From Octopus sinensis (taxonomy: Eukaryota), in NCBI RefSeq assembly GCF_006345805.1, contig NC_043002.1, positions 85,188,001-85,252,000 on the forward strand: a DNA stretch of 64,000 bases, written 5' to 3'. Under the pieces are notes generated by a model, which did not search any database, was not told the origin of the DNA, and saw nothing but the letters and a program-made list of their open reading frames with translations. Within the stretch, counting starts at the first letter, position 1. Every line of letters begins with the position of its first letter. Both the position numbers and the translations under genes were made by a program. This document shows, one piece after another, positions 1-63,605 of the stretch.

Positions 1-625
1 AAGTGTTATAGGCATTGTAAGTATAAGCGTTATGAGCATTGTAAACATAAGCTTTACTGGTGCTGCAGATATAAATTTAAAACATAAATATGAATGTAAA
101 TATGCCAATGTTAGATTAAGTAAATGGGTGGGTTGCAATCTGGTTAGGTTAGTCCCTGGCAAGAGAGAGAGTGGGAAGTGGGGGCCACGGGTGAGATTGC
201 AGGTATGAGAGAGGAGACTACCAGTACGGAAGGGGATTTCCGGTTAGATAAGCAAGATTTCCGATATTGGTGGTAGTGGTGTGTGTGGGGTGGGGCGTTA
301 AACTATATTTTTAATATATATACACTTCATGAATATTGTTTGGCATAGTTTTCTATGACTGATAATTTAATTTTAAAAATTTCTGTCAAATTTGTTTGGC
401 TTTAAAAGTTCATATTTTATATTTCTTCTCTTTCCAGGGACCACTATTTGGAAACCGATTTGTGTTTTTTTACAAAAAAGGCGTCAGTCGATTCATCACA
501 TGTTAGAAATAGTCTAAGTGGACAAATGTTTTGATAAAGTTTCTAATGTGCTAGATATACAGAAACTTCTGATACGAAGGCAAAGAGTGGTGGGGAAAAG
601 GGTAAAAGAAAATAAACAAACAAAA

Positions 626-1360
626 ATGAATCTGAATGAGAAAGATGAGTCAAAGGCAGCAGAAAGTGGTGAAAATAATTCCAAAACAAAACCACCGAGT
701 TCAGTTGATTGGTCAAAGTATGGTGTACAGCGGTGTTCTGGTTGTAAATTCACTACAGATGACCATGGCTTATTCGATGCACACATCTCAATGTGTCGTT
801 CTTTCAACAAGAAAAGGATCGCTACAACTAATCAGCCAGATAATGAAAAAAAGAAATACAAGAAACTCCTGCTTCAACTTGAAGAGCCATACCTGGAAGG
901 TAAAACTCCTTCTACAACTACTTTCTTGTTACGGTGTTTCCATTGTCGTGGCTATTTTTCTAAAGTCACTTCTATTAAAAATCACCATTCTGTAAAACAT
1001 GCAAGTAAGAATTTAATGTTTAGTCTTGTTCCTTTTGAGGATATTGTAAACCCAGAAAAAGTGACATCAGTTCCTGTAACTGATTCCCATGTAGATCAAC
1101 AAAATATTAGCTCTTCAATGTCTACTCCACAGCCAAGTTCTCCTATACCTATCACTGCTACCAAAACTGCTTGCTCATCTCATGGAATCATTCAGCCATC
1201 TTCTGTAAAGTCATCTTCAATGGTGAAAATTATGTCTGCTGTGAAAACACCTTTGAATCAGATGCCTATTGCAAAGAAAGATAATCTTCAGGCATGTCAG
1301 CCAAGAAAGAGTTTTGAGGAAAAATTCTTCAGAGAACAGTGTGTGCCGCCAGTCAAGTGA
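626..1360 (+). CDS. Zinc-finger protein, N-terminal (pre-UGA) part, 244 aa from ATG626
   Basis: ATG in caaaaATGa context. CSGC-x12-H-x3-C (C2HC) and CFHC-x12-H-x4-H fingers followed by an S/T/P-rich region. The ORF track's GTG518 start is preceded directly by in-frame TAA. Confidence 0.75.
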   Translation: MNLNEKDESKAAESGENNSKTKPPSSVDWSKYGVQRCSGCKFTTDDHGLFDAHISMCRSFNKKRIATTNQPDNEKKKYKKLLLQLEEPYLEGKTPSTTTFLLRCFHCRGYFSKVTSIKNHHSVKHASKNLMFSLVPFEDIVNPEKVTSVPVTDSHVDQQNISSSMSTPQPSSPIPITATKTACSSHGIIQPSSVKSSSMVKIMSAVKTPLNQMPIAKKDNLQACQPRKSFEEKFFREQCVPPVK

Positions 1361-1426
1361 CTAGACGGCCAACTGAAATTAGATGGATTACCAGGACAAA
1401 CTAATTCTCTAATTATCAGTGATGCC
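1358..1426 (+). promoter_or_regulatory. Candidate stop-codon readthrough element: UGA-CUAG plus 3' stem-loop
   Basis: aag TGA CTAG. ACTGA-AATTAGA (1372-1383) pairs with TCTAATT-a-TCAGT (1408-1420), giving 12 bp with one bulge. GGC1367-69/GCC1424-26 form an outer stem. Confidence 0.6.
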
Positions 1427-3499
1427 TCGACTGACACTCCATCTCAAGAGATGGCTAAGCATAACAAGGAAAAAACCTCTACTGGATCTTCAAAAAGTGA
1501 TTCACCTATAATTGTATCACCTGTAACAGCTGGACCTGTTAATCTTTCACAAAAGCAAATGTCTTACTCACCCAATCAGAAAAAACATGCAACTTTTCAG
1601 AAGAAATCTCCTGTTTTATTGCCAAATATATTACCAAAAAACTATTTAGGTACTATACAAACACCTTCAAACCAGAATTTTCAAATCGTTTGTGCTGCAC
1701 CTGAAGTACAGAGTTCTGTCAAAGTTTCTGAAGCTGTGCCACCTATTATTATTAATATTCCAAACACAACCAATTCTTTTGGTTACCAGCCACTTCTCAT
1801 TGGATCTTCAAACAAACAAATACCTGTAAGTTCAGTTCCAGTCACACCTGTGACTGAATCCTCAGCTACAAAAACATTTGCTTCTAATGTCCCAACAGCA
1901 ACTACCACTTCTCTTGCTCCATATGCACTTGCAACCAATGTTCAGGTTAATAACCAAAATCAAGACATTTTAGGATTTTTTGTTCGCCCTAATTTGGTAA
2001 CACCTACTCTACCTGTAGTTTCACCAGTTAATACTGCCAAATACAAAATACTGCCATATGCAAAATTCCCTCAAACTTTGGAGCCTGGTGTAATGAATCT
2101 TATTGCAACTACACCTTATTCAAACATATATACTCCTGCAAGTATCCCACCACCTAATGTTCAGTCTAATTCGCTAGCAACTAACCCAACTGTAGTTTCT
2201 CCTAGTGTATCGTTGTCTAATAATATTTACACATATTTACACATGACTGATGCACCTAAAACGAACCCTCCTGTGTCAAACCAAAGTGTAATTAGCTTAA
2301 ATGTCCATAAACCAAATTTGAAACCAAAATCTTCAGACAAAAATGCTTTAAAACATTTGAAACAGACTCCTACTACTTCCTACAACCGTTTACTCCTAAA
2401 CAATAAAACAATTTCTAAACTACTTGGACATAAACCTGAGATTTATCCAAAGCTATTATTCCAGCCAGGTGAAAAAGAAGAAATGCCTGGCCAGTCAGAT
2501 TGTGGCAACAACATTAAGGTTGAAGCAGTTTGGTCTGTTAGAGATGTCAAGAGGAATATATCAGATGGAAAGGTTATTGACTTAGATTTAGTGGAGCCTT
2601 TATCTGATGACTATTTGGAGTCAACTAAACTTTCTAAACAATCACTTAGTACTTTTGAGTCTGTAAAGAAAACATTAGCTTCTAATGCATATGTGATTGA
2701 TGATAGTACATTGTTTGAACCTGCTGAAAATAATTTATCCAGAGTAACTGAACTTGAATCTGGGAAGTTGATTGTAGAATCTCCACATTCAAATGTGATA
2801 TCAAATAAAGAGTCCACATCTGAGGAATCTAATTTAGTAGTTTCTTCAAATGTTGACAATGTTACTAAAATAAAAACAGAACCATTTAATTCAAAGACTA
2901 CCTATATTAATGTAAATCTATATCCTAAAGAGAAAAATGAAATCTATGGTGGGAACTTTTATATATGTGGATTTTCAAATTGTTTGTTTTCTAGCCTTGT
3001 GCAAGATGAATTTGTAGAGCATTTACGTTGTGTACATAGTAAACAGAAAAAAGATTATGCTTGTGCACACTGTGGCCAAGCATTTCCAGTTATTGACTGC
3101 TTTTTAAAACACTTATCTACCCATGTCTCTACAGACATGTTTCTTCTTTATTCTTGTTCCCTTTGTGGTTTTAACACAAATCTTATCAAAATGTTTGTAC
3201 AACACAATGATTCCGTTCACTCAGAGGAGAAAGAATTCTGCTGCGCATACTGTGGCCTCATATTTCAATGTAGTGCTGAGCTGTTGCAGCACTTGCAATT
3301 GAACTTGCTGAAATATGTACACTGTCCGCACTGTGAGGCTAAAAATAGTCAAAGACAGCAAATTTTGAAACATATTCAAGTAAAGCATCCTGGAAAGTCA
3401 AAATGCATTTTTGTAACTAGTCAAATAATATGTAAAGAAAAACAGAGAGCCTTAAATGATGTTGTGAACTTGTTGTCTGATGAGTCTGATTGTGACTGA
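1361..3499 (+). CDS. Zinc-finger protein, C-terminal (post-UGA) part; 957 aa total if fused with 626-1360
   Basis: Same frame as 626-1360. The 30 codons between TGA1358-1360 and ATG1451 are stop-free. Long P/S/T/N-rich linker, then five fingers (CGFSNC..H..H, CAHC..H..H, CSLC..H..H, CAYC..H with last ligand missing, CPHC..H..H) at ~2960-3390. Confidence 0.8.
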   Translation, partial: LDGQLKLDGLPGQTNSLIISDASTDTPSQEMAKHNKEKTSTGSSKSDSPIIVSPVTAGPVNLSQKQMSYSPNQKKHATFQKKSPVLLPNILPKNYLGTIQTPSNQNFQIVCAAPEVQSSVKVSEAVPPIIINIPNTTNSFGYQPLLIGSSNKQIPVSSVPVTPVTESSATKTFASNVPTATTTSLAPYALATNVQVNNQNQDILGFFVRPNLVTPTLPVVSPVNTAKYKILPYAKFPQTLEPGVMNLIATTPYSNIYTPASIPPPNVQSNSLATNPTVVSPSVSLSNNIYTYLHMTDAPKTNPPVSNQSVISLNVHKPNLKPKSSDKNALKHLKQTPTTSYNRLLLNNKTISKLLGHKPEIYPKLLFQPGEKEEMPGQSDCGNNIKVEAVWSVRDVKRNISDGKVIDLDLVEPLSDDYLESTKLSKQSLSTFESVKKTLASNAYVIDDSTLFEPAENNLSRVTELESGKLIVESPHSNVISNKESTSEESNLVVSSNVDNVTKIKTEPFNSKTTYINVNLYPKEKNEIYGGNFYICGFSNCLFSSLVQDEFVEHLRCVHSKQKKDYACAHCGQAFPVIDCFLKHLSTHVSTDMFLLYSCSLCGFNTNLIKMFVQHNDSVHSEEKEFCCAYCGLIFQCSAELLQHLQLNLLKYVHCPHCEAKNSQRQQILKHIQVKHPGKSKCIFVTSQIICKEKQRALNDVVNLLSDESDCD

Positions 3500-4564
3500 G
3501 CATAGAGACACAAATAAAACCCATATTTATTAACTGCTACAGGTAAATATTCAGCAGAATCTAACTTAATTGAACAGTTAGAAATGTTGATAAAGTTTTT
3601 GTTTCTTGACAAGAATCAAAAATTGAAATATTTTAAGTTTTTCTCTTCTAAAAAGGATAGTGATAAGGTGAAAAATTTATAATATTGTACAAAAAAAGGT
3701 AAAAAAAATGGTTTTAATGAACACCAAAATGTTTACAAGAAAATAGCAATACTGTCAGGATAGTAAGCATTCCAGAAACTTCTTTGTCCAAGTTTATGTC
3801 AGATACAGAAGCTTGGAATCCCTAATTTTGTTTAGTGTAGTTATAATGAGAGACTAAACAAGCTGGTGGTTCATTTTGGAATAAACAAGGAATTTTTAGT
3901 CTTGAGGTAAAACAGCTTAGAAATAAAGGTGCTGGGTTTTAACAATCAACAATGCACCATATTTTATTTCTTAATATTATTTTTTTTGCCTTAGTCTATC
4001 TGATTCACTGTATGTTCCATTTCTACTTAATGGTTCAGTGTGGTATGGTGTTGTTGACACAAAATGCAAATGGTCAAATTTGCAAAAATACCTACCGATG
4101 CTAGCTTCCTCTTTTGCTTGCTAAGAAACTTGTATATGATGACATGAAAGAATGCTAGTATCATTTTGTTTTACGAACATTAAAAGTAATCGCAGTTTTC
4201 ATGAAAAAAAAAATGAATGATGATGGTAAAGTATAATATTCAGTCACAAAAGAAAAGGCTAAATATTTATGCACTAATACATTAGTTTTTCTAGTACAAA
4301 ACAATTTTTGACTGAAAGGTACTTTAGTATATGTTTTTATTAACCTTAATAATTGAGGATTCTGATTTAAAGTGGAACTTGGGAATATTCTTTGGACATA
4401 TAAATCAAGTTCCTCATTTTTTTAAAGACATTTAAGTGTCAAGATATGTCAGTATATTATTGTGATGTACAGATCTGTCATTTCTGATTATCCAAACTTC
4501 AAAGTCATTGCTGTACAAAATACAATTCTCTTGTGACTTAGTAACTGTTTCATAATTGTTTTAT

Positions 4565-4850
4565 AGCTTAGAGAAGGGTAAGAATACACCAATAACGCCT
4601 TTTCAGTGCCCCCAAGGCTAATGGGAAGATGTTATCTTTGGTGTAGAGACCTGGTCTGAAAAGTGGACTCGTCTGAAATACACTGGGTATATGGTGTTGA
4701 TAAACTGGGCAACAGATATAAGAACCACCTACCAACAGAAGCAGTTCTTCCAGTTGACTGCTAATAAATTTCTGTCTATCAAATTTCACTCACATCGCTT
4801 CAGTCAACTCCAGGTTTTGTGCAGCGGGGTTGAACTCTTAACCACTGTCA
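4565..4850 (-). mobile_element. Degenerate tRNA-SINE fragment
   Basis: caaatttcactcac...gcagcggggttgaactc resembles the reverse complement of the SINE head/body seen at 17288-17688. Confidence 0.4.
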
Positions 4851-5140
4851 TTGTAAAACAAGCGTCTTAAACAAATGACTATTCTTCCTACATCTGTTGG
4901 CCATGATTCTGCTAAGTTTATTTTTCTTTGCTGACAAGACATTGAATTTTCATATCAGTAATTATATAAACAATAGAGGATCCAGGTAAATAGGAATAAA
5001 TTGCAATTATTTGTTAATTGTATGTGAACTGTAATACATGACACATTTTTACTGCTGTTTCTTCTTTTTTGTTTTTTTATTATAAAAATGTATTCGATCA
5101 GTGAATTTAGTCTTTTTTTGCAGTTGATAATGTGATACTA

Positions 5141-5370
5141 TTAACCCTTTTGATAATAACCCGGCCAAAACCGGCTCTGGCTCTGTAGTATAAATGTCTT
5201 GTTTTCATAAGTTTTTCATTAAAATATACCACCAAACCTTAGTCACAATTTATGATCCTAACAGTAGCTTAATGGTAACTAAGTTATTTTACTAAATTCT
5301 TTGTTATATTTACAATTAATTGAAAGAAACACAGAGCATCTCAAAATGAATACAGTAACGAAAGGGTTAA
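5141..5370. mobile_element. piggyBac-type MITE
   Basis: TTAA-CCCTTT...AAAGGG-TTAA termini, i.e. TTAA TSD with CCC/GGG ends. Confidence 0.75.
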
Positions 5371-6394
5371 TGACCAAGAGCGGATAAAAAAAAGAACAAG
5401 GAAGTGAATTCAGTTGTGCCTGTGTTCCGATAACTAGCCAATGTGACGAGAAATACAGTTCTGCCAGTAGGTGTTATAATACAAGAACAAGTGTTAGGAA
5501 AGGAAAAACACCCAAAGTAGAAGAATTATGCAATTACTATAATGTATATAACATGAAATATCAAAATTTTACTAAAGTATATTAAAATTATTCAAAATGT
5601 CCTTCTACTGACCAAAGCTAGTTTGCAGTCATTTGGGATATCAATTGACAAGCTTCGAGAAATAAATCTGTTGTAAATTGCTGAAAAAAAGATGGCTTGG
5701 TCACAACTGGAACATTATGTTAAGTGAATAAGGTTTGGCATCACAAGGCCATTCCTCATCACCTGTGCATATCTTCTTCAGTTTTCTTATATTGCATGCT
5801 CCATCCACTTTACTCAACAATCATTTGACACTTTACTTAATCATTCTTCATACACGTTTGTATCATTGCAGTCACTCTAACACACAACAGTGAATGTCTG
5901 ATTTTTTTTGCCTTTGCATAACACTTAGGTTGTGCTTCTATGCAAATATTTCACATCATACAGTCTGCCCAACACTTGATGAGAGAAGTTTGCTGTCAAC
6001 TAAAGTAACAGCTCTCTTTTCCTACCTTTGTCCTTAGCCTGGCAACTACAACTGTCTTGATATCCACCACTATTGTTGATTAGGTCACCTAGGTAACAAG
6101 CTTTCAGTTACTTTGATAATGTGGCTAGCCTGAGACTAAACAACTACACTACATTATAGTATGGTATGAGGATGCCTCTGTATGGCAACAGGCCTGATAG
6201 TTTACATTCAAACTGGACATACTGTCTGAATGATAAGACAAATTTGAGTATATTACAATTCAATCATTAGTTATCTTATCACCTTTTCTAACCTTTTAAC
6301 ATTTGGATTCCTCTGGCAAATGTAATGCTTAGTTATTTACATTGTTTTGCTGAGCCTTCCAAAGGAGATGACAAAAGAACCAAGTTATGTGGCA

Positions 6395-6650
6395 CATTGC
6401 TGTTCTCCAAAAGACCTGCCTGTCTCAACAGAATTGATCTCCTAAAAACCAAGGTGCCACGTAAAACACTGGTGATGATGCCACATAAAAAACATGCAGT
6501 ACACTCTGTAAAGTGATTGGGGTCAGGAAGGGCATCCAGCTGTAGAAACCAAGCCAAAACTGTCTATGGAATTTGGTGCGGCCCCTTGCTAGCTCCTGTC
6601 AAGCCATTCAACCCATGCTAGCTTGGAAAGCGGATGTTTAATGATGATGG
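6395..6650 (+). mobile_element. SINE 3' half with (GAT)n-like tail
   Basis: aggaagggcatccagctgtagaaac...aagcggatgtttaatgatgatgg, a typical interspersed-repeat body and tail. Confidence 0.5.
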
Positions 6651-6654
6651 TGTA

Positions 6655-6784
6655 TTTATCTTGTCGCTTTGAGATTTTGATGATGTGACTTTTAGGTCAG
6701 CATGAGAGGCTGGGTCTGGCCAATTTGAAAATATGCATAGAATATTTGGGCCAAATATGGCTGGTTTAAATGCTAATGGGTTAA
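6655..6784. mobile_element. Terminal fragment of a second piggyBac-type MITE
   Basis: Ends ...tgctaatGGGTTAA, the same terminal motif class as 5141-5370. Confidence 0.45.
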
Positions 6785-7489
6785 ATCAGTTGTGTCAATG
6801 AGAACTTTTATGGTCACTGGGTTTTTAGTTATTTGCTTTGTCAGGTGGAAAGGTAGTGCCAAAGATCCTTTATAGGACTTTTGAGTAGTAGTAGTAGTAT
6901 TAGTTGAGAGCAAGATAGTTTCAAACTGGAAACCTGGTTTAAATACAACAGAGTGACTCCACCTAAGGCATACAGGGTGCTGTTAAACCAGGTGATTAAG
7001 TTCGACTAATCAAAAACGCCATAGCAGGATTTGAACTCAGAATGCAGAGAGCCAGAACAAGTACTACAAAACAAAGGCAACCCTTTCAACTCTAATAATT
7101 CCACTTCGCCATTGCTCTAGACTGGTACTTTTATTTATCTGCCCTAAAAAAAAAGAAAAGAAAAAACATTAAAATAATGACCTTTTATTCTAAAAGGATG
7201 GGATTTTCTATTTTGATCATAGGCCAAAAGAGGAAATCCCGTCTGTCTCATGTATATATATATCATAATGTATGTATGTATATAGACGACTTCAGTCGTG
7301 TTGAAATCATCTTAGTTATCTCCCTTGATTTGAAAAACGTTTCTCACGCAACAATGCCCTTGTCACCATACAGGTACACAACCCCTTTATCCGGAAATCT
7401 AAAATCTAAAAAGCCCCTGAAACTTTTTTATGAAGGGTGGAGTGCGTCATAATACGTCATTTAGGTGTGCAAACAGCTGAACTCAATTC

Positions 7490-7930
7490 AGGTATGATGT
7501 GGCAATGCTTGGCAGGTTGGCCACCACTTATTGCCCAATTTCATGTGTGACTCAGCACTCATAGAGAGATGTCCATTTGCAATTTGCTGTCTTAGTGTTG
7601 TTCCTCGTGATTTTGCATATAATTTATCCTGAAATTGTTTGAAAAGAACTGCAGATACCCCAATGGATAACAGAAAAAGAAAAAGGAAACATCATTATCA
7701 ATAGTACAGGAAATAGAGTTACTACAGAAACTTGATCATGGGGTGTCTGTGCAGTGGCTCACTGAAGAATATGAAACCATTCCTACTGACGATATGGTGA
7801 AAATTTGTGATCAGTTAATAGCTGACCTTGAACAACATGCATTTATCGGTGAGCAACAGATTATGGGAGTTTACTCAAAGAGATATTGCTTAGACAAAAC
7901 CTATGCTAATGAGACAGATGACACTTGAAG
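7490..7930 (+). pseudogene. Degenerate pogo/Tigger-like transposase C-terminal remnant
   Basis: IPTDDMVKICDQLIADLEQHAFIGEQQIMGVY resembles Tigger/Jerky-type C-termini as I recall them. An NAW motif lies upstream. No intact ORF. Confidence 0.45.
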
Positions 7931-9269
7931 TCTTTAAAAATGCCCTCTCTCATTATGCTCCTTCCATCACATGAGAATGTCATTCCTGGCCCATTATCGG
8001 AAGTTTGCTTGCAACCTGATGATGGTGGCACTGATGGGTCCTGTTCTACAACTTAACTGCAGCTACATCTTTAGCCTAGTTTGAACCAATTTAAGGCTTT
8101 AGCATACAAATAAATTGTAATACCATTTATAGTATTTATAGTGCATCACATTACAGAAATATTATGGTAATGTGTATACCTGAACTTGTGGGTTGTGTAT
8201 CTTTGTTTTAAATTATCCCACTATGCATTCTGTTATTTGTGATCTTAATTATCTCACTATTTCATTTTCCAGTATATTACTCTATAAATAAACTGTAATA
8301 ATATTTATAATCTTTATGGTACTTTTGCTACCATAGTAGGATGTCTGTTTTGATGTTTGGTTTACAATCTGAGGCAGTTGGCTTTTGTTCTGAAATCCAA
8401 AATTCAGAGCACAACTGCCACCAAGGGTTCTGGATAAAGGATTGTGTACTTGTATTCATAAATTCACTGAGAAAAATGTTATGTATATATGTTTTGTGTG
8501 TGTGTGTGTATTTTGATGTTCTCTCTTCCCTTGGGCTCCTTTTGTCTAATTTATTTCTGTTTTTGGTAATTTAGATTTGGCATTATATGTTGACAAAATA
8601 CATTAAGGATATTGTGCAATCGTTGTTCATAAAAGTGTGCAGAGCCTAGTCCTGGTGGCTGTTTACAACTCAGAGGTCTGTGACAACAGGTTAAATATTT
8701 TGTTTTATTGATGGGAAATAATGCTGCCCTGTGGACAGTATACAGGCTCTTGAGACTTCAACCAGAAACCTATGTAGCTTGCTATCATCTTTAATACCAG
8801 TATCATTAGTATTTTTTCATTTCTTAATTGTCTATATTTCTTTTGCATTTATAAAAAGCCAGTTTTTTAAAGGACAGAACGTGTCCACTGTTTCTTCTAT
8901 CAGCAATGTTCAAAGCTCAAATCCTGACGAAGTCAGCTTTACCTACCACCATTAAAATAAGTACCAATAAAATACTGGGGTTTATCTAATCAACTATATT
9001 CCTCACTCCCACCCCTTAGCATTTTTTCTGTTATATATGAATATTAGAGTGGTTACAGCAGTAAACTGTTTCTCTTTACAATGCTGACCTGGATAACTGA
9101 TATTTTCTCTGAAACCTAATACAGGGCCAGTGACGTAATATGTATTTTGGTTAAGAGGCCAGTTGTACACACATCTCTTAGTACTTTATGAATCTTTTTT
9201 TTTTTAATGGTTTAATCATAGCAAGTAGGACAACAGCTCTGACTGTTTTAAGGACCTCTAAGCATGGCA

Positions 9270-12956: not shown

Positions 12957-12977
12957 CCTATATATATATATATAATT

Positions 12978-13019
<42 letters not shown>

Positions 13020-13153
13020 ATATATATGTATATATTATATATGTATATATATATAAGTATATGTATATATATATGTATATATATATGTATATATATATAT
13101 GTATATATATATATGTGTATATATATATGTATATATATATATGTATATATATA

Positions 13154-13193
<40 letters not shown>

Positions 13194-13325
13194 AATATAT
13201 GTATATATATATATGTATATATAATAAGTATATGTATATATATATGTATATATATGTATATATATATATGTATATAATATATATGTATAATATATATATG
13301 TATATATATATATATATATATATAC

Positions 13326-13356
<31 letters not shown>

Positions 13357-13363
13357 TATGTAT
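12957..13363. repeat. Compound (TA)n/(TATG)n microsatellite
   Basis: Direct inspection. Confidence 0.95.
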
Positions 13364-13509
13364 AATCAGCCGAAATTGCAAGGATGATCCGGTTCTTGAC
13401 TGAAGATTGAAGGCTTCGAATGTCCCGTCCGTGTTTTTTGTATCGTCTTCTCAATGTTTTGCGTTCTTGTCTCAGTTTGTATTTTTTTACATATGTATAT
13501 ATGTATATA

Positions 13510-18884: not shown

Positions 18885-18921
<37 letters not shown>

Positions 18922-18981
18922 ATATACACCCATATATATGTGTGTGTGTGTGTATACAGTATATATATACATATATATAAG

Positions 18982-19026
<45 letters not shown>

Positions 19027-19110
19027 AACACACACACATATATATATAAACACACACATATATATACATATACATATATGTATATGTATATATATATATG
19101 TGTGTATATA

Positions 19111-19180
<70 letters not shown>

Positions 19181-19245
19181 AATATATATATATATGTGTG
19201 TATGTATATATCTATATATGTGTATATATATATATATATATACTT

Positions 19246-23765: not shown

Positions 23766-26700
23766 ATGACTGCACTTAACCTTGGGTGTTTGAATGTGCG
23801 TGGTCTGAGCTCGAAGTGGAAGCCAGCTTGTTTCCCCGACGACCTCAGATCACACGATATGCATGTATTGGTTGCTACAGAGACCAAGCTGGACAGTCTA
23901 CAAACCTTCTCGCCCCTCTTGAATGACTATGAGAAAATCATGTCTCCTAGCCGGACCGGAGGCCGAGGGGGTGTAGTAGTACTGGCTCGAAAAGGCTTGG
24001 CGCTGCAGACAAATTCAGTCTATGTAGACCCAGAAGGTGGGCTGGTCGTCCTTGATGTGACATACAGCAGTAAGGACTTCAGGTTGATCGGGATCTATGC
24101 ACCTTGTGCTAGAGGATTTCAAACTGATTTTTATCGGCGCCTAGAGAATTTTCTCGTGACGTCGAAGATATTAATGGTGTTAGGTGACTATAACGCTATT
24201 GTTGATGCGCGCATCGATAGCGTTGGCTCGATCTATAGGAAAGTAAAATCACGTCGCGTGGATCTGCTCAAGCGGTTACAGCTGGCGGTTCGTTACAGAC
24301 TTGACCATCCGAACGTCCCAGAGTGGACCTGGATGAGTGGCGACGGAAGGTTCAAGTCCTATTTAGATAGGATAGTGATAAGAACTGGAGATAAATCTAG
24401 TTTTAGCTGTCCACAGCTTGTCCAAGTAGCATACACTGACCATAGAATGGTTAAGTGTAGACTGGACATAGATAGTACAGTTAAGAGAGGATCCGGCTAC
24501 TGGAAACTGAACAAGACTATTTTGACTTGCGAAGCATACCGTAGCCGAATTGAGGAATTAGTACAGAGGGCGTTAATTAGTACAGAAGGCGTTCGCCCTG
24601 AAGAGAGCCATTCATTTTGAGTCTATTAGATTTAGCTGTCAGCTAAGACTAGATAAGACCAGAATAGAAGGGCAACTAGTTAAGGACCAAGAGGAGGCGT
24701 TGAAGTTGGGCTCTGCATCTCACATTTTGGCAGCCAGAATGGCCTTGGACAGTCACCTCAAAGCCAAACATGAGGGGTGCAGAGTTCGGGCTAAAATGCG
24801 CGCATTAGGCCGTGAGGGAATTAATGTTGCCGGATGGGCCCCGTACGGTAGAAACCCAGCGTGGCAATTATGCCACAATTAGGTCTTTCGTGGATGACAA
24901 TGGGAGTTCGGTCGATGGACGGGACGAGATGTGTGAGGCGATTCACAAGCACTTTGCCGAGTTGCTTGGGAGTAGCGGGGCGCTGGATCATGGCGAGGCC
25001 CTTAGGGACTTCCTCTCTGGCGGCCCGCGTCTCTCGGCACGAGAGACTGAGTGTTGTGAAGGGCTAATCACGGCTGAGGAGGTAATCGAGGTACTGGGCG
25101 GATGCCCCGGGGAGAAGTCGCCGGATCTCGATGGTCTGCCTTATGAATTTTACAAAACTATGCCAGACTTGTTCGGGCACCTGCTGGCCAGCGTCTACGC
25201 CAATTGGCAGCAGAATAGGAGAATTCCCAAGTCTGCGAGCCGGAGGGTGGTAGGGGGAAGAGATAGGGAACTTCAGGCCCATAACTCTGCTGAACACAGA
25301 GTTAAAGATTTTGGCCAAGGTGATTGCGAAAAGGTTGGCGCGGGTCGTGGACAAACTTGTCGAGGAAGCGCAAACGTGCGCTATCCCGAGCAGGACGATC
25401 CACGACAATCTCCACCTTATACGCTACTCCTTAGAGGGTGGGGAAGCTTGCTGGCGCGGGGGGGGGCACTGGTACATTTAGACCAGTCTAAGGCATTCAA
25501 TAGGGTCGACCATCGGTACTTGGCGGCGGTCCTCGAGAAGGTTGGCCTGGGCCCGACCTTCCGGGGTTGGATTGCTGCGTTGTACAGCGACATCGAGTCC
25601 GTCGTGAAAGTGAATGGTTTCCTTTCGAAACCATTCAGGATCGAGCGCTCAGTGCGTCAGGGGTGTCCCCTGTCCGCACCTTTGTATGTACTGGCTCTCG
25701 AGCCATTATTGCGGAAGTTGGAGGCACTAGGGGGCGCACCGCATGATCTATGGTGTGGAAGAGAAGCTACGGCGTATGCGGATGACATCTCCATCATCGT
25801 GGCGGATGAGGGTCAGCTTCCAGTGGTGGAAGAGGCTATCAAAAGTTACGAGGCGGTGGCAGGAGCAAAGCTTAACAAGGACAAGTCAATTGGTTTGCAG
25901 CTTGGCACCTGGAGGGGCAAGCCGATGCCGTCCAATAACGTCGTGGGGCGTTGGACGGAAGGTCCTGTTAAGCTGCTCGGAGTCTGGTTCGGGCCAGACC
26001 TCCAGATAGAGAAAAATTGGAGTGAGGTGGCCAGCAAGGTGACTGCTCCAACCCAGACTTGGTCTGGACGGGCGTTATCCTTGCTAGGAAAGGCGGAGGT
26101 GGTGCAGATGTTTATAGCGTCGGTTATCACCTACCGTCTGATTGTGGTGCCTTACCCCGATTTGTGGCTGAACAAGTTGGAGAGAATCCTTTTCCACTTT
26201 TTGTGGAAGGGAGGAAAGCCACTTGTGAAGCGCTCTGTCTGCTGCCAGAAACCGCTAAAGGGTGGACTAGGGATGCCTTGGCTGAGGATGCCAAAATTCG
26301 TGTTAAGGTTAAGGCACCTCTGGCTTTACCTGGATGGAGAACAGGTGTGGTCACTGCACGCTCGGTTCTACCTTCCGCAATTAACGTCCTTAACGGACAT
26401 TGGCAATTGGATCAAGCAGAGACCTAGGCTGGGGGACTGGTAATTGGAGTGCCGCCAGGCACTTCAGCTACTCTCTCGGGCGGGCAATTCCGGCAACAAG
26501 TGTTCCACCGCGGATTTCTATAGCGGGTTAGTAGAAGTCCGAAGACGCCTTGGGGGAGACCCTGGGCTAAGATGAAAATCAGTTAATCAACCTGTTCTGG
26601 AGAACTTTCGGGCCGGGGTATCTGGATAATTACCAGAAATCCCTGGCTTGGTAGTGCTTCCGTGCGGCGTTACCTGTTCGTGATAAACTGTCAAGGCACG

Positions 26701-33902: not shown

Positions 33903-33991
<89 letters not shown>

Positions 33992-34007
33992 TAATAATAA
34001 TAATAAC
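33903..34007. repeat. (TAA)n target array
   Basis: Direct inspection. Confidence 0.95.
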
Positions 34008-35350
34008 AACACTAAATGAACTGACCAAAATAGATAGGAAAACAAGAAAAATAATGACAGGATCTAGGATGCATCACCCAAAATCTGACATAGAAAGACT
34101 ATATATACAACGTATAGAAGGTGGTAGAGGCCTTATACAGCTGGAAAACTACTATAAAATAACCACCATAGGACTGCAAAAATATCTACTTCAGAAAGAA
34201 GGAAAACTGATACAAATAGCGGCAAAATACGAGCAAAACAAAAAACTGTTCTCGGTATTTAAGGAAGCTGACAAATACAAACAAGAAATCATACCACCTA
34301 ATAAATATGAAGAAGAAGAAGAAGAAGAAGAAGAAGAAGAAGAAGAAGAAGAAGAAGAAGAAGAAGGAGGAGGAGGAGGAGGAGGAGAAGAAGAAGAAGA
34401 AGAAGATAAAGAAACAACAAAAGCTATAAAACAAATGAAATCCAAACTAAAAATAGAACAGCAACGAACCATGATAAAACGATGGCAAGAAAAGCCCCTT
34501 CATGGTAAATACTGGACTAAACTAAACGCAAAAGAAATAGACAAAGAAAAATCCCAGCAATGGTTGAGAAGCTTAAGACTCAAAGCAGAGACAGAGGGAT
34601 TTTTAATTGCAGCACAAGACCAAAGCCTCCTCACCAGAAATTACCAAAAACATGTAATGAAAAGAAATATAATAAGTAACTTCAGAATATGTGGAGATGG
34701 ACAAGAAACAATAAATCATATTATCTCTAGCTGCCCAGTCCTGGCTAAGAAGGAATATATTCACAGACATGTCAGAGTTGGAACCTACATACACTGGAAG
34801 CTATGCCAACATTATGGAATAACAACAGAAAAAAGATGGTATAGGCACACACCAGAAAAGGTCACAGAAAACGAGAAAGCAGCCATACTCTGGGATATGC
34901 CGATACACACAGATAGAGAAATTAAGGCCAACAGGCCAGATATAGTTGTCAGAGATCATGAAGAAAAAAAATGCTTTCTAATTGATGTATCAATACCGGC
35001 AGATGACAACGTCTCTTTAAAAGAAATGGAGAAACTTTCAAAATACAAAGACCTGGAAATAGAGGTAACCAGAATGTGGAATCTAAAAACAGAAACAATT
35101 CCTATCATAGTAGGTGCATTAGGCATGATAAAAAATATTCAGACAAATACATAACAAAAACACCAGGACTTACAAACACATATAACATACAGAAAATTGC
35201 ACTACTAGGCACTGCACACATCCTACACAGAACACTTTCCATACGATAACCATCAGAGCATCACAACAAATCACAGCACATACCCAAGGCACACAGAGCT
35301 GCGCTCGGTAGTGAAGTGAAAGCACGCTATAAAAATAAAACTACCGAAAA
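34008..35350 (+). mobile_element. 5'-truncated R4/Dong-clade non-LTR retrotransposon (RT end, CCHC, restriction-like endonuclease)
   Basis: IDRKTRK, LYIQRIEGGRGL, CRICG..ETINHIISSC, RHVRV, RPDIV..LIDVSIP, EKLSKY. Flanked by (TAA)n. A 1-bp frameshift near 35135 hides the natural end ...LLGTAHILHRTLSIR*. Confidence 0.85.
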
Positions 35351-41007: not shown

Positions 41008-41056
<49 letters not shown>

Positions 41057-41206
41057 ACCTATCATTCCTTTATCCCTTCTGTTCCTACTATCTAACTTTG
41101 ACGTCGATTCTTCTAACGGTTTTTTTAAAAAAGCACTCATTATCGCTTTGTTTACCATGTAGGCAATCATCGAAATGTTTGTTTGTCTTGTTGTCGAGAG
41201 AGGGTC

Positions 41207-41297
41207 CCTTGCTTCCTGATGAGAAGATTGCATAATGCACCCTTTATTCCTTTGGAATGCAAACATGCTGTCTTCGAAACATATGTCGAGAGTAAGG
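41207..41297 (+). ncRNA. Type I hammerhead ribozyme, 328-bp family
   Basis: CUGAUGA, GAAGA/UCUUC stem II (extended by UUGCAU/AUGCAA), GAAA, palindromic ACAUAUGU, GUC cleavage after 41287, bulged stem I. Confidence 0.8.
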
Positions 41298-41533
41298 AAT
41301 TTTGTTAACATCTTCGTTCGACTCCATTCTTTCATTCATATATATATATATTATATATATATATATATAATATATATATCCCTACCTATCATTCCTTTAT
41401 CCCTTCTGTTCCTACTATCTAACTTTGACGTCGATTCTTCTAACGGTTTTTTTAAAAAAGCACTCATTATCGCTTTGTTTACCATGTAGGCAATCATCGA
41501 AATGTTTGTTTGTCTTGTTGTCGAGAGAGGGTC

Positions 41534-41626
41534 CCTTGCTTTCCTGATGAGAAGATTGCATAATGCACCCTTTATTCCTTTGGAATGCAAACATGCTGTC
41601 TTCGAAACATATGTCGAGAGTAAAGG
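41534..41626 (+). ncRNA. Type I hammerhead ribozyme, 328-bp family
   Basis: As above. Stem I UUGCUUUC/GAGAGUAA gives 8 contiguous pairs including 2 G-U. Cleavage after 41615. Confidence 0.85.
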
Positions 41627-41973
41627 AATTTTGTTAACATCTTCGTTCGACTCCATTCTTTCATTCATATATATATATATATATAAACATACATACATAC
41701 ATACATACATGCATACATACATACATACATACATACATACATACATACATGTATGTATATAAATACGATCCAGGGGGTCAAGTGTAGGAGGTTTGTAAGC
41801 TTCAAGCAGTAGGCGGCCAGTATAGAGAACAAAAAGTGGGCAGTGTATGATAAGATAACAATTTATTGGCATTGAGATTTGCACACTTTTTCCTATATCG
41901 AAGTTGCAAAGAAATTTGATAAGCTGATAGTTTCTATAGAGCTCACTGTTAGCAACTAATACTGCTAAAGATG

Positions 41974-53340: not shown

Positions 53341-53738
53341 TTTGGATTTTTTCCAGTAATGATAATCATGTATAATAAGGTTTTCGATTTGACCTTACTA
53401 ATACATTCCCCACTTTTAGGTCACTTTAAATAAAACCCTTGATTCAATAACACTGTGTATATACTCTATACATGGAATGACCAATTTTAAATACTATTGG
53501 ATCTTACTCATATTGGAATCTTATATGTATGCCATTCTGCCTAAATAATGGATCTACAAAGACAATATCCTTGCATATCTCACATCTATTTTCATTCCTC
53601 CACTTCACTCTCTAAAATAATTATTGCTTAACCATCTTCTCATACCGTCTCCAATGAAGGGATATAATAAATATTTATAAATGTTCTAAAATCTACACAG
53701 CCTTGGTTTTTTATCTCATTACGGAAAAAAATTATGTA

Positions 53739-53792
<54 letters not shown>

Positions 53793-53827
53793 TATATATA
53801 TATATATATATATATCTATATATATAT

Positions 53828-53913
<86 letters not shown>

Positions 53914-53955
53914 ATATATATTTTAATTTTTTTTTGTACTTGTTTCAGTCATTTG

Positions 53956-63196: not shown

Positions 63197-63199
<3 letters not shown>

Positions 63200-63246
<47 letters not shown>

Positions 63247-63455
63247 TATACACACACAGAGTGAGACATACACACACACACACACAATATTATATATATA
63301 TAATATATATATATATATAATATATATATATATATTATATATATATATATTATATATATATATATAATATGTATGTATGTATATATATATATATAATATA
63401 TATATAATATATATATATATATAATATATATATATATATAGTATATATATATATA

Positions 63456-63493
<38 letters not shown>

Positions 63494-63520
63494 CATGTAT
63501 GTATGTATTTATGTATGCAT

Positions 63521-63585
<65 letters not shown>

Positions 63586-63605
63586 ATATGTATATATTCA
63601 TGTAT
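63200..63605. repeat. Compound (TA)n microsatellite block
   Basis: Direct inspection. Confidence 0.95.

What the first reader, a model, noticed from the sequence alone, without database searches (positions are those of the whole stretch)
1352..1450. Candidate programmed stop-codon readthrough (UGA-CUAG plus 3' hairpin) fusing two zinc-finger modules
Seen: the two ORFs listed separately are one frame, open from ATG626 to 3499 except for a single TGA at 1358-1360. The stop is followed by CTAG. A 12-bp, one-bulge stem (1372-1383/1408-1420) starts 12 nt downstream, with an outer GGC/GCC stem starting at +7. Established: UGA-CUAG is the readthrough motif of mammalian AQP4, OPRK1, OPRL1, MAPK10, LDHB and VDR and of alphaviruses, and 3' stem-loops a few nt past the stop stimulate readthrough. 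Inference: termination gives a 244-aa protein with 2 fingers, while readthrough gives a 957-aa protein with 5 more fingers, i.e. a translational switch in nucleic-acid-binding capacity. I know of no such case described in cephalopods. The 2.1 kb of intact frame after the stop argues against simple pseudogene decay.
Basis: partly seen in the sequence, partly recalled or inferred. Interest (0 to 1): 0.92.

Follow-up and report, generated by a model that had tools for sequence, protein, structure and literature searches.

The report
Conserved leaky stop codon in octopus gene
An octopus zinc-finger gene is split by one in-frame UGA stop followed by CUAG and an RNA hairpin, all kept unchanged in five octopod genomes, so ribosomes most likely read through it part of the time to make a short and a long protein from one mRNA; this has not been shown at the bench.

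Summary
The frame is open from ATG626 to 3499 apart from TGA 1358-1360, which is followed by CTAG. A 12-bp bulged stem (1372-1383/1408-1420) lies 11 nt downstream.

It is not an assembly error or a private allele. O. vulgaris, O. bimaculoides, a third Octopus-like species and Argonauta hians all carry exactly one in-frame TGA-CTAG at the same place. Both flanking ORFs are under purifying selection (dN/dS 0.25-0.55 and 0.29-0.43).

Between Octopus and Argonauta, synonymous sites are saturated (dS about 1.0-1.4). Yet 31 consecutive codons around the stop (1349-1456) have identical third positions (0 of 100,000 permutations). The basal stem keeps one compensatory A-U to G-C change.

More distant relatives, including one 2053-aa uninterrupted ORF, carry both finger modules in a single protein.

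Programmed UGA readthrough is the best explanation (about 0.6). The pattern matches the published comparative criteria for readthrough sites.

Three rivals are not excluded without RNA or protein data:
- a weak 63-nt in-frame exitron (1357-1419);
- A-to-I editing of UGA to UGG;
- separate initiation at ATG1451.

If readthrough is right, this is a new member of a known kind. I found no cephalopod case in the literature.

The parts
626..1357 (+). ORF1, 244 codons. This is the N-terminal module with two zinc fingers (C2HC-like at about residues 37-57, C2H2 at about 104-125).
   Evidence: It is conserved in O. vulgaris (99%), a third species (84%) and Argonauta (58%). dN/dS is 0.25-0.55. It has only one copy in the genome.
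1358..1360 (+). In-frame TGA, the candidate readthrough codon.
   Evidence: It is the only internal stop of the frame in all five genomes.
1361..1364 (+). CTAG directly 3' of the stop, completing the UGA_CUAG motif.
   Evidence: Invariant in all five genomes; TGACTAGAC is fully identical. The motif is described in PMC5868278.
1361..1371 (+). 11-nt spacer between the stop and the hairpin (7 nt to the outer GC pairs).
   Evidence: The only change across all species is G1367A in Argonauta.
1372..1420 (+). Stem-loop. The basal 12-bp stem (1372-1383/1408-1420, bulge at 1415) is conserved. The apical part (1384-1407) is variable and 15 nt shorter in Argonauta.
   Evidence: It is the minimum-free-energy structure in all four distinct species and in the RNAalifold consensus. 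There is one compensatory A-U to G-C change, A1376/U1416 (column 49/89). All other changes fall in the bulge or the loop.
1439..1454 (+). Second small invariant hairpin, CCAUCU-CAAG-AGAUGG, whose 3' arm contains ATG1451.
   Evidence: All 6 pairs are invariant, and the only change is in the loop. Its function is unknown.
1349..1456 (+). Block of frozen synonymous sites around and 3' of the stop.
   Evidence: A run of 31 aligned codons has identical third positions between Octopus and Argonauta. The next longest run is 11, and 0 of 100,000 permutations reach 31. There are 0 synonymous against 12 nonsynonymous differences between TGA and ATG1451.
1361..3496 (+). Readthrough extension, 712 codons: a long low-complexity linker plus a five-finger C2H2 array (about 2936-3450).
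   Evidence: dN/dS is 0.29-0.43 overall and 0.07-0.17 in the finger array.
3497..3499 (+). Final TGA stop of the long frame.
1357..1419 (+). Rival reading: a candidate in-frame 63-nt exitron (CAA|GTGACT...TTATCAG|TG) that would remove the stop. It is 48 nt in Argonauta.
   Evidence: Found by the enumeration. The donor is weak: about 1.2 bits, against about 8.7 for the consensus under the same rough matrix.
436..437 (+). Putative 3' splice site (ttctctttccAG|G) opening the large exon. Inferred only.
   Evidence: Read directly from the sequence. The same motif is present in the third species and in Argonauta.
3543..3548 (+). Putative 5' splice site (CAG|GTAAAT) 43 nt after the final stop. Inferred only.
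   Evidence: Read directly from the sequence. GTAAATAT is kept in the third species and in Argonauta.

Best explanation
Proposed mechanism. This is programmed translational readthrough of a UGA stop. The gene descends from a single long ORF found in a molluscan family of giant C2H2 zinc-finger proteins. Before Octopus and Argonauta split, the ORF acquired an in-frame UGA about a quarter of the way along.

The stop sits in the leakiest known metazoan context, UGA-CUAG. An 11-nt spacer and a conserved 12-bp bulged stem-loop follow it. Most ribosomes would terminate and release a 244-aa protein with two fingers. A fraction would decode UGA with a near-cognate tRNA (Trp, Arg or Cys, going by other systems) and continue for 712 codons. 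That gives a 957-aa protein carrying five more C2H2 fingers.

The ratio of short to long isoform would then be set at translation.

Shown here:
- the anatomy of the site;
- its conservation;
- coding constraint on both sides;
- frozen synonymous sites around the stop;
- the single-ORF state in relatives.

Inferred: that the ribosome, rather than the spliceosome or ADAR, bypasses the stop; how efficiently it does so; and what the two isoforms do.
For: 1. One in-frame TGA followed by CTAG-AC is present in five independent assemblies: the window, O. vulgaris OX597819.1, O. bimaculoides CM046606.1, Logan SRR11869394/91, and Argonauta hians BAAFZT010000090.1.
2. Purifying selection acts on both sides. 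ORF1 dN/dS is 0.25-0.55, ORF2 is 0.29-0.43, and the finger array is 0.07-0.17. Both halves are therefore translated.
3. The frame relation is kept despite indels, including a 15-nt deletion between the stop and ATG1451 in Argonauta.
4. Third-position divergence between Octopus and Argonauta averages 0.45. It is 0.00 across 1352-1440, in a run of 31 codons that 0 of 100,000 permutations reach.
5. The basal stem is predicted independently in all four distinct species, with one compensatory A-U to G-C pair. All other substitutions are in the loop or bulge.
6. PMC3159437 describes the same pattern at readthrough sites in alphaviruses, plant viruses and Drosophila kelch: synonymous conservation 3' of the stop, plus a stem of 12 bp or more after a spacer of about 8 nt.
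7. UGA_CUAG alone gave 1.3-17% readthrough in every human gene tested (PMC5868278).
8. The closest relatives outside the octopods carry the N-module and the C-terminal finger array in one ORF with no stop (P0010, 2053 aa, a single genomic ORF in L015; and P0157). They group with the octopod gene in a tree, with 80/86 support. Many bivalve and cuttlefish family members also have the N-terminal finger motif and the C-terminal array in one protein.
Against: - I could reach no RNA-seq, Ribo-seq or proteomic data, so the bypass step is not observed.
- Covariation is weak: 1 of 24 pairs, equalled by 119 of 500 shuffles. The three Octopus-clade sequences are nearly identical here, so there are effectively two independent lineages.
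- Hairpin stability is only modestly better than shuffles (z -1.5 to -2.1).
- dS is 0 in the first 30 codons after the stop, so translation of that stretch cannot be shown by dN/dS.
- The same conserved bases can be read as splice signals of a 63/48-nt in-frame exitron.
- The conserved block ends exactly at a conserved ATG (1451) that sits in its own invariant hairpin. That would also suit an initiation element.
- Cephalopods edit mRNA heavily, and conserved flanks are also expected around conserved editing sites.
- Third positions are frozen while positions 1 and 2 change at the normal rate (14 changes in 31 codons). A plain RNA-structure constraint does not explain that asymmetry.
Confidence: 0.6

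Rival explanations
1. Exitron, meaning alternative splicing inside the exon. A 63-nt mini-intron (1357-1419; 48 nt in Argonauta), bounded by GT and AG, is spliced out of some transcripts. That removes the stop in frame (...VPPV-N-DASTD...) and gives a 936-aa protein. Retention gives the 244-aa product or nonsense-mediated decay (NMD).
For: - GT at 1357-1358 and AG at 1418-1419 are invariant.
- Both lengths, 63 and 48 nt, are multiples of three.
- Two CTAAT branch-point-like motifs and a pyrimidine-richer tract precede the CAG.
- This model would explain conservation of the frame on both sides as well as readthrough does.
Against: - The donor CAA|GTGACT (CAC|GTGACT in Argonauta) lacks both G-1 and G+5. 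It scores about 1.2 bits against about 8.7 for the consensus.
- From general knowledge of splicing, 48 nt, with about 32 nt from donor to branch point, is at or below the usual metazoan minimum.
- The branch point, pyrimidine tract and AG form the 3' arm of the conserved stem, which would hide them.
- CTAG at donor positions +5 to +8 is poor for a donor but optimal for readthrough.
- The databases hold no spliced or fused protein model. RefSeq annotates only the 691-aa downstream ORF in O. bimaculoides. The O. vulgaris and Argonauta annotations give two separate genes.
Confidence: 0.12
2. A-to-I RNA editing. ADAR deaminates A1360, so UGA becomes UGG (Trp) in a fraction of transcripts. The conserved flanks would be the double-stranded RNA (dsRNA) that guides editing.
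For: - Coleoid cephalopods recode mRNAs on a very large scale (from my own knowledge; also noted in PMC5868278).
- The stop is UGA, which one A-to-I change turns into a sense codon.
- Strongly conserved flanks with frozen synonymous sites are also what a conserved editing site would show.
Against: - The 5' neighbour of A1360 is G. That is the disfavoured context in all metazoans (bioRxiv 10.1101/2020.01.19.911685).
- A1360 has no conserved pairing partner. Its best partner is at -5 in O. sinensis and O. bimaculoides, -147 in the third species and -29 in Argonauta.
- The small local hairpin around the stop is broken in two species.
- The conserved stem starts 11 nt downstream and does not contain the site.
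- No assembled protein with Trp at this position was found.
Confidence: 0.12
3. Two separate proteins and no fusion. ORF1 terminates at 1360, and ORF2 is translated on its own from ATG1451. This could happen by termination-reinitiation, by an internal ribosome entry element in 1361-1450, or from a shorter transcript. The conserved block would be that element.
For: - ATG1451 is invariant and lies in an invariant 6-bp hairpin.
- The block of frozen synonymous sites ends just after it.
- All public annotations start the downstream protein at this ATG.
Against: - Stop and restart codons are 90 nt apart (75 nt in Argonauta), not overlapping as in known termination-reinitiation (from my own knowledge).
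- Out-of-frame ATGs at 1383 and 1422 precede ATG1451. The one at 1422 is kept in Argonauta and has G at -3.
- This model does not explain the CUAG.
- It does not need the open, in-frame 30/25 codons, nor an indel that is a multiple of three.
- Relatives make one protein.
Confidence: 0.1
4. Selenocysteine insertion, a decaying pseudogene, or an assembly error.
For: UGA is the Sec codon. A single stop could also be a recent lesion.
Against: - No SECIS (selenocysteine insertion element) or any other Rfam match at E up to 10 in 1-8000.
- The stop is present in five independent assemblies.
- There is purifying selection and no second stop or frameshift in 712 codons, despite dS of about 1 or more.
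Confidence: 0.03

Closest known systems
Vertebrate UGA_CUAG readthrough genes (AQP4, OPRK1, OPRL1, MAPK10, MDH1, LDHB, VDR) and alphavirus nsP3/nsP4 UGA-CUAG readthrough
   Same: The stop and the four following bases are identical, and the motif is conserved phylogenetically. In OPRL1-type cases and alphaviruses a 3' structure adds to the effect (PMC5868278; PMC3159437).
   Different: The vertebrate extensions are short C-terminal tails of 7-67 aa. Here the stop lies a quarter of the way into an ancestral ORF, and the extension is 712 codons with a whole DNA-binding array. The host phylum is Mollusca, and no efficiency has been measured.
Drosophila kelch (UGA, ORF1-ORF2 fusion) and headcase readthrough
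   Same: These are cellular genes in which readthrough joins two long ORFs. They have a conserved stem of 12-14 bp with a one-nucleotide bulge about 8 nt after the stop, and peaks of synonymous-site conservation 3' of the stop (PMC3159437).
   Different: The kelch context is UGA-AUG, not CUAG, and its stem encloses a loop of 268 nt. Here the structure is a compact 49-nt hairpin, with a spacer of 11 nt (7 nt to the outer GC pairs). The genes are unrelated.
Conserved A-to-I recoding sites of coleoid cephalopods
   Same: Same organisms; a codon whose meaning would change after transcription; strongly conserved flanking sequence.
   Different: The adenosine has a 5' G and no conserved duplex partner. 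The conserved bases spell a known translational readthrough signal.
Molluscan family of giant uncharacterised C2H2 zinc-finger proteins (for example Octopus LOC115224503, and Mytilus, Mercenaria, Argopecten and Sepia homologues)
   Same: The same C-terminal five-finger array (41-46% identity) and, in many members, the same N-terminal finger motif. These are large single-exon ORFs.
   Different: All of those are uninterrupted ORFs of 2000-3900 aa. Only the octopod gene studied here carries a conserved internal stop, and it is much shorter (957 codons).

Membership tests
Programmed stop-codon readthrough, UGA_CUAG type with 3' stem-loop | In-frame UGA immediately followed by CUAG | tested here: met
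   TGA 1358-1360 plus CTAG 1361-1364, identical in five genomes.
Programmed stop-codon readthrough, UGA_CUAG type with 3' stem-loop | Stop codon and its context conserved across species, rather than replaced by sense or other stop codons | tested here: met
   Invariant across Octopus sinensis, vulgaris, bimaculoides, a third species and Argonauta, at dS of about 1.0-1.4.
Programmed stop-codon readthrough, UGA_CUAG type with 3' stem-loop | Protein-coding constraint in the same frame downstream of the stop | tested here: met
   ORF2 dN/dS is 0.29-0.43 and the finger array 0.07-0.17. No stop or frameshift occurs in 629-722 codons in any species. The first 30 codons are inconclusive because dS is 0.
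Programmed stop-codon readthrough, UGA_CUAG type with 3' stem-loop | [quoted passage not shown] | tested here: met
   A run of 31 codons with identical third positions (1349-1456), reached by 0 of 100,000 permutations.
Programmed stop-codon readthrough, UGA_CUAG type with 3' stem-loop | Conserved RNA stem about 8 nt after the stop, supported by compensatory changes | tested here: inconclusive
   The stem is predicted in all species, 11 nt after the stop. It has one compensatory pair, and 100% of cells pair, against 28-47% in the slid controls. The covariation is not significant (119 of 500 shuffles).
Programmed stop-codon readthrough, UGA_CUAG type with 3' stem-loop | Measured readthrough: ribosome footprints, reporter activity, or a fusion protein or junction peptide | not testable with these tools
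   No RNA, ribosome or proteome data could be reached.
A-to-I stop-loss recoding by ADAR | Edited adenosine lies in a conserved double-stranded region | tested here: not met
   The best partner of A1360 differs between species: -5, -5, -147 and -29. The local hairpin is broken in two species.
A-to-I stop-loss recoding by ADAR | Favourable neighbours (5' U or A, not G) | tested here: not met
   The 5' neighbour is G. This is disfavoured across metazoans.
A-to-I stop-loss recoding by ADAR | A in DNA but G in cDNA | not testable with these tools
   No read data. No assembled protein with Trp at the site, which is weak evidence.
Exitron (in-frame intron inside a coding exon) | GT-AG boundaries and a length that is a multiple of three, conserved | tested here: met
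   1357-1419 is 63 nt, and 48 nt in Argonauta.
Exitron (in-frame intron inside a coding exon) | Competent splice signals and a feasible length | tested here: inconclusive
   The donor scores about 1.2 bits in a rough matrix and lacks G-1 and G+5. The 3' signals are buried in the stem. A length of 48 nt is extreme.
Exitron (in-frame intron inside a coding exon) | Junction reads | not testable with these tools
   No RNA data. No spliced model in public annotations.
Selenoprotein | SECIS element in the 3' UTR | tested here: not met
   No SECIS match at E up to 10 in window 1-8000. A spliced distal 3' UTR was not searched.
Termination-reinitiation | Stop and restart codons overlapping or adjacent | tested here: not met
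   They are 90 nt apart (75 nt in Argonauta), with out-of-frame ATGs in between.

The most novel reading that the evidence does not exclude
Octopods have kept a translational switch since before the Octopus-Argonauta split. An ancestral single-ORF zinc-finger gene was split by a UGA in the leakiest known context, and readthrough now sets the ratio of a two-finger isoform to a seven-finger isoform. This would be the first programmed readthrough described in a cephalopod or any mollusc. It would also show that the UGA_CUAG-plus-stem signal works across Bilateria. In animals already known for RNA editing, it would add a second, translational layer of recoding.
Probability: 0.55. Interest if true: 0.72.

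Novelty: new member of a known kind. Interest (0 to 1): 0.65.

Why it matters
Readthrough that joins two functional modules is well documented in viruses and insects. In vertebrates it is known only as short tails. I found no case reported in cephalopods or other molluscs.

This locus offers a compact element of about 100 nt, conserved over a distance at which synonymous sites are saturated. It can go straight into a reporter.

It also poses a sharp question in animals that recode mainly by ADAR: does the ribosome, ADAR or the spliceosome bypass this stop?

If it is readthrough, three things follow:
- The UGA_CUAG signal is shown to be ancient and general.
- We have an example of a stop fixed inside a formerly continuous ORF to create isoform control.
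- Genome annotators are warned that the two adjacent "genes" called in O. vulgaris and Argonauta, and the 5'-truncated RefSeq model in O. bimaculoides, are probably one gene.

Tried and rejected
- **Rfam scan of 1-8000 at E up to 10.** It returned only three chance-level hits and no SECIS.
- **Pfam on the full product and on P0010.** Nothing was significant. The fingers are too divergent for Pfam, but they match PDB C2H2 arrays.
- **Long-range complement of the conserved segment.** Bases 1419-1435 match 483-499 in the 5' UTR (17 nt, 88%). I rejected this because three mismatches arise in O. bimaculoides while 1419-1435 stays identical.
- **Small hairpin enclosing the stop (1345-1369).** It is predicted in O. 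sinensis and O. bimaculoides but broken in the third species and in Argonauta, so it is not part of the conserved element.
- **Overlapping ORF as the cause of the frozen third positions.** Both other frames have stops within the block (TAG 1362, TGA 1374, TAA about 1401), so I rejected this.
- **Homology of the stop to a Trp codon in P0010.** VPQVNW resembles VPPVK*, but the match is not colinear and MAFFT does not align the two. I treat it as chance.
- **TGACTAGAC...CAACT in P0010's gene.** It lies at a roughly colinear place but out of frame, and it is not kept in the sister sequence L016. I treat it as chance and recorded it.
- **Identifying the species behind the accessions.** No paper mentions SRR11869391/4, SRR9969967 or ERZ21867824.
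- **Scan of JGI metagenome contigs for the conserved 25-mer.** No hits.
- **Third homology search, with the N-module of P0010.** It found only P0010 itself.
- **Liscovitch-Brauer 2017 (PMC5499236).** The paper is not held in the library.
- **miRNA precursor or repeat origin of the hairpin.** The stem is too short in Argonauta, there is no Rfam hit, and the element is single-copy.


Full report

Yes. ATG626 opens a frame that runs to TGA 3497-3499 with a single interruption, TGA 1358-1360, followed by CTAG. Termination gives 244 aa. Reading through gives 957 aa.

Bases 1372-1383 pair with 1408-1420, with A1415 bulged. Octopus has an apical extension, and a short outer GC helix joins 1368-1369 to 1424-1425. 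Against dinucleotide shuffles the fold is only modestly unusual (z -1.5 to -2.1).

The C-terminal part is a true tandem C2H2 array, matching PRDM9, ZNF568 and CTCF fingers at E 1e-15 to 1e-9. Pfam itself sees nothing.

**2. Is it an error or a private allele?**

No. Protein searches and contig look-ups recovered the orthologous locus from four other sources:
- O. bimaculoides (CM046606.1);
- O. vulgaris (OX597819.1, 99% identical);
- an unidentified third Octopus-like species (Logan SRR11869391/4);
- Argonauta hians (BAAFZT010000090.1).

In all five the long frame has exactly one internal stop, at the same aligned column, and it reads TGACTAGAC.

Public annotations split the locus. O. bimaculoides RefSeq gives only the downstream 691-aa protein. 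O. vulgaris and Argonauta have two adjacent genes. The window's genome is 2.72 Gb in 13,516 contigs, and the 136-nt element is single-copy in it.

**3. Are both halves coding?**

Nei-Gojobori estimates give dN/dS of 0.25-0.55 for ORF1, 0.29-0.43 for ORF2 and 0.07-0.17 for the finger array. This holds at every distance, including Octopus against Argonauta, where dS is 1.0-1.4.

No species has a second stop or a frameshift. Indels are multiples of three, including a 15-nt deletion between the stop and ATG1451 in Argonauta. Decay is therefore excluded.

**4. The RNA-level signal**

Third-position divergence between Octopus and Argonauta averages 0.45 along the gene. It drops to 0.00 in the windows covering 1352-1440.

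The longest run of codons with identical third positions is 31 (1349-1456). The next longest is 11, and none of 100,000 permutations reaches 31. Between the stop and ATG1451 there are 0 synonymous and 12 nonsynonymous differences. Among the three Octopus-clade species, the least variable 40-codon windows of the whole gene include this same stretch; they tie with one window in the finger array.

All four distinct sequences fold into the same basal 12-bp bulged stem. Argonauta has lost 15 nt of the apical part. It carries one compensatory change in the basal stem, A1376-U1416 becoming G-C. The remaining substitutions in the hairpin fall in the bulge and loop.

Formally this covariation is weak. 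It is one pair in 24, matched by 119 of 500 shuffles, and the three Octopus sequences are nearly identical here.

A second 6-bp hairpin (1439-1454) is invariant and holds ATG1451 in its 3' arm. A small hairpin around the stop itself is not conserved.

**5. The ancestral state**

A profile search of 1.8 billion representatives found P0010. It is a 2053-aa product of one uninterrupted genomic ORF (L015). It carries both the N-module (41% identity to ORF1) and the five-finger array (46%). A related transcript-like contig (L016) shows the same arrangement.

In a tree of the finger arrays these two group with the octopod gene, apart from the Octopus paralogues, with moderate support of 80/86. ORF1 has no other copy in the Octopus genome.

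Many bivalve and cuttlefish members of this family of giant, uncharacterised C2H2 proteins also combine the N-terminal finger motif with the C-terminal array in one ORF. So the two octopod ORFs are halves of one ancestral protein. The stop is a derived, retained feature. I could not name the species behind P0010 and L016. That they are decapodiform cephalopods is my guess only.

**6. Mechanism**

The best explanation is programmed UGA readthrough. UGA_CUAG is the strongest autonomous readthrough context known in animals. Every human gene carrying it gave 1.3-17% readthrough, and several alphaviruses use it (PMC5868278).

Firth et al. 2011 (PMC3159437) showed that enhanced synonymous-site conservation 3' of the stop marks readthrough sites in alphaviruses, several plant virus genera and Drosophila kelch. 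The sites also have a stem of 12 bp or more after a spacer of about 8 nt. They proposed the combination as a criterion for cellular candidates.

The present locus fits the criterion, with a spacer of 11 nt (7 nt to the outer GC pairs). I put this explanation at about 0.6.

**7. Rivals**

*(a) Exitron.* The invariant bases can also be read as CAA|GTGACT ... CTAAT ... TTATCAG|TG. That is an in-frame mini-intron of 63 nt (48 nt in Argonauta) whose removal deletes the stop. Four points count against it:
- The donor lacks G-1 and G+5 and scores about 1.2 bits, against 8.7 for the consensus in my rough matrix.
- A length of 48 nt is extreme.
- The 3' signals are sequestered in the conserved stem.
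- No spliced model exists in any annotation.

*(b) A-to-I editing of UGA to UGG.* This is attractive in a cephalopod. However, the adenosine has the universally disfavoured 5' G and no conserved pairing partner. The conserved stem does not include it.

*(c) Independent initiation at ATG1451.* The conserved ATG, its hairpin and the end of the conserved block fit this. It does not explain CUAG or the open in-frame spacer. It also has to contend with out-of-frame ATGs at 1383 and 1422 and with a 90-nt gap between stop and start.

*(d) Selenocysteine.* No SECIS was found.

None of (a) to (c) can be excluded without RNA or protein data.

**8. What stays unexplained**

Inside the frozen block, positions 1 and 2 change at the normal rate (14 changes in 31 codons) while position 3 never changes. 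If changes were spread evenly over the three positions, this would have a probability of about 0.003. No alternative frame is open there. I have no explanation beyond chance combined with loop and compensatory changes that happen to fall on positions 1 and 2.

**9. Verdict**

The mechanism is still inferred. If it is readthrough, this is a new member of a known kind, UGA_CUAG plus a 3' stem and a long two-ORF fusion like Drosophila kelch. It would be in a phylum where I found no such case reported.

Noticed in passing
window 1349-1456: Within the conserved block, third codon positions are completely frozen between Octopus and Argonauta. First and second positions change at the gene's normal rate (14 changes in 31 codons). 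The other two frames carry stops, so an overlapping ORF does not explain it.
   Followed up: partly
window 1439-1454: An invariant 6-bp hairpin, CCAUCU-CAAG-AGAUGG, encloses ATG1451, the start used by all public annotations of the downstream ORF. The only substitution in four species is in its loop.
   Followed up: partly
window 436-437 and 3543-3548: The 3.1-kb coding exon looks bounded by a splice acceptor (ttctctttccAG|G) and by a donor (CAG|GTAAAT) 43 nt after the final stop. Both motifs are kept in Argonauta. If that 3'-UTR intron is real, termination at 1358 would leave a junction 2.2 kb downstream, and the mRNA could be an NMD target.
   Followed up: no
L015 about 4115-4135 (P0010 gene, codons about 372-378): The uninterrupted relative contains TGACTAGAC followed by CAACT at a roughly colinear place, but out of frame (CTG ACT AGA CCA ACT). 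The motif is absent from the sister sequence L016, so this is probably chance.
   Followed up: yes
L016 3590-3650: In the Logan contig of the second uninterrupted relative, the ORF shifts frame at an A-run inside a repetitive Asp/Ala/Asn-rich stretch, just before the finger array. This is either an assembly error or a true frameshift.
   Followed up: no
G000 contig C25 (loci L008-L012) and proteins P0011-P0038: The genome holds several paralogues with the same five-finger array inside giant single-exon ORFs of 2000-3900 codons. One is mis-named 'serine-rich adhesin for platelets-like'. Homologues occur in bivalves (Mytilus, Mercenaria, Argopecten, Solemya and others) and in Sepia. This is a large molluscan family of uncharacterised C2H2 proteins.
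   Followed up: partly
window 23766-26443 (+): Remnant of a non-LTR retrotransposon. One ORF has an Exo_endo_phos endonuclease domain (E 9e-11) and a second has reverse transcriptase RVT_1 (E 2e-15). The two are in different frames. This explains the GC-rich stretch at 22-28 kb.
   Followed up: partly
window 33904-35154 (+): An open frame of 416 codons begins in an (AAT)n array and has poly-Glu/Gly runs and a weak zf-RVT match (E 0.006). It is probably the tail of another retroelement.
   Followed up: no
window 12959-13364, 18885-19242, 53733-53921, 63199-63597, 41010-41703: Long (TA)n microsatellites of up to about 200 copies, and a 327-nt tandem duplication. They create spurious Tyr/Ile-rich ORFs.
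   Followed up: no
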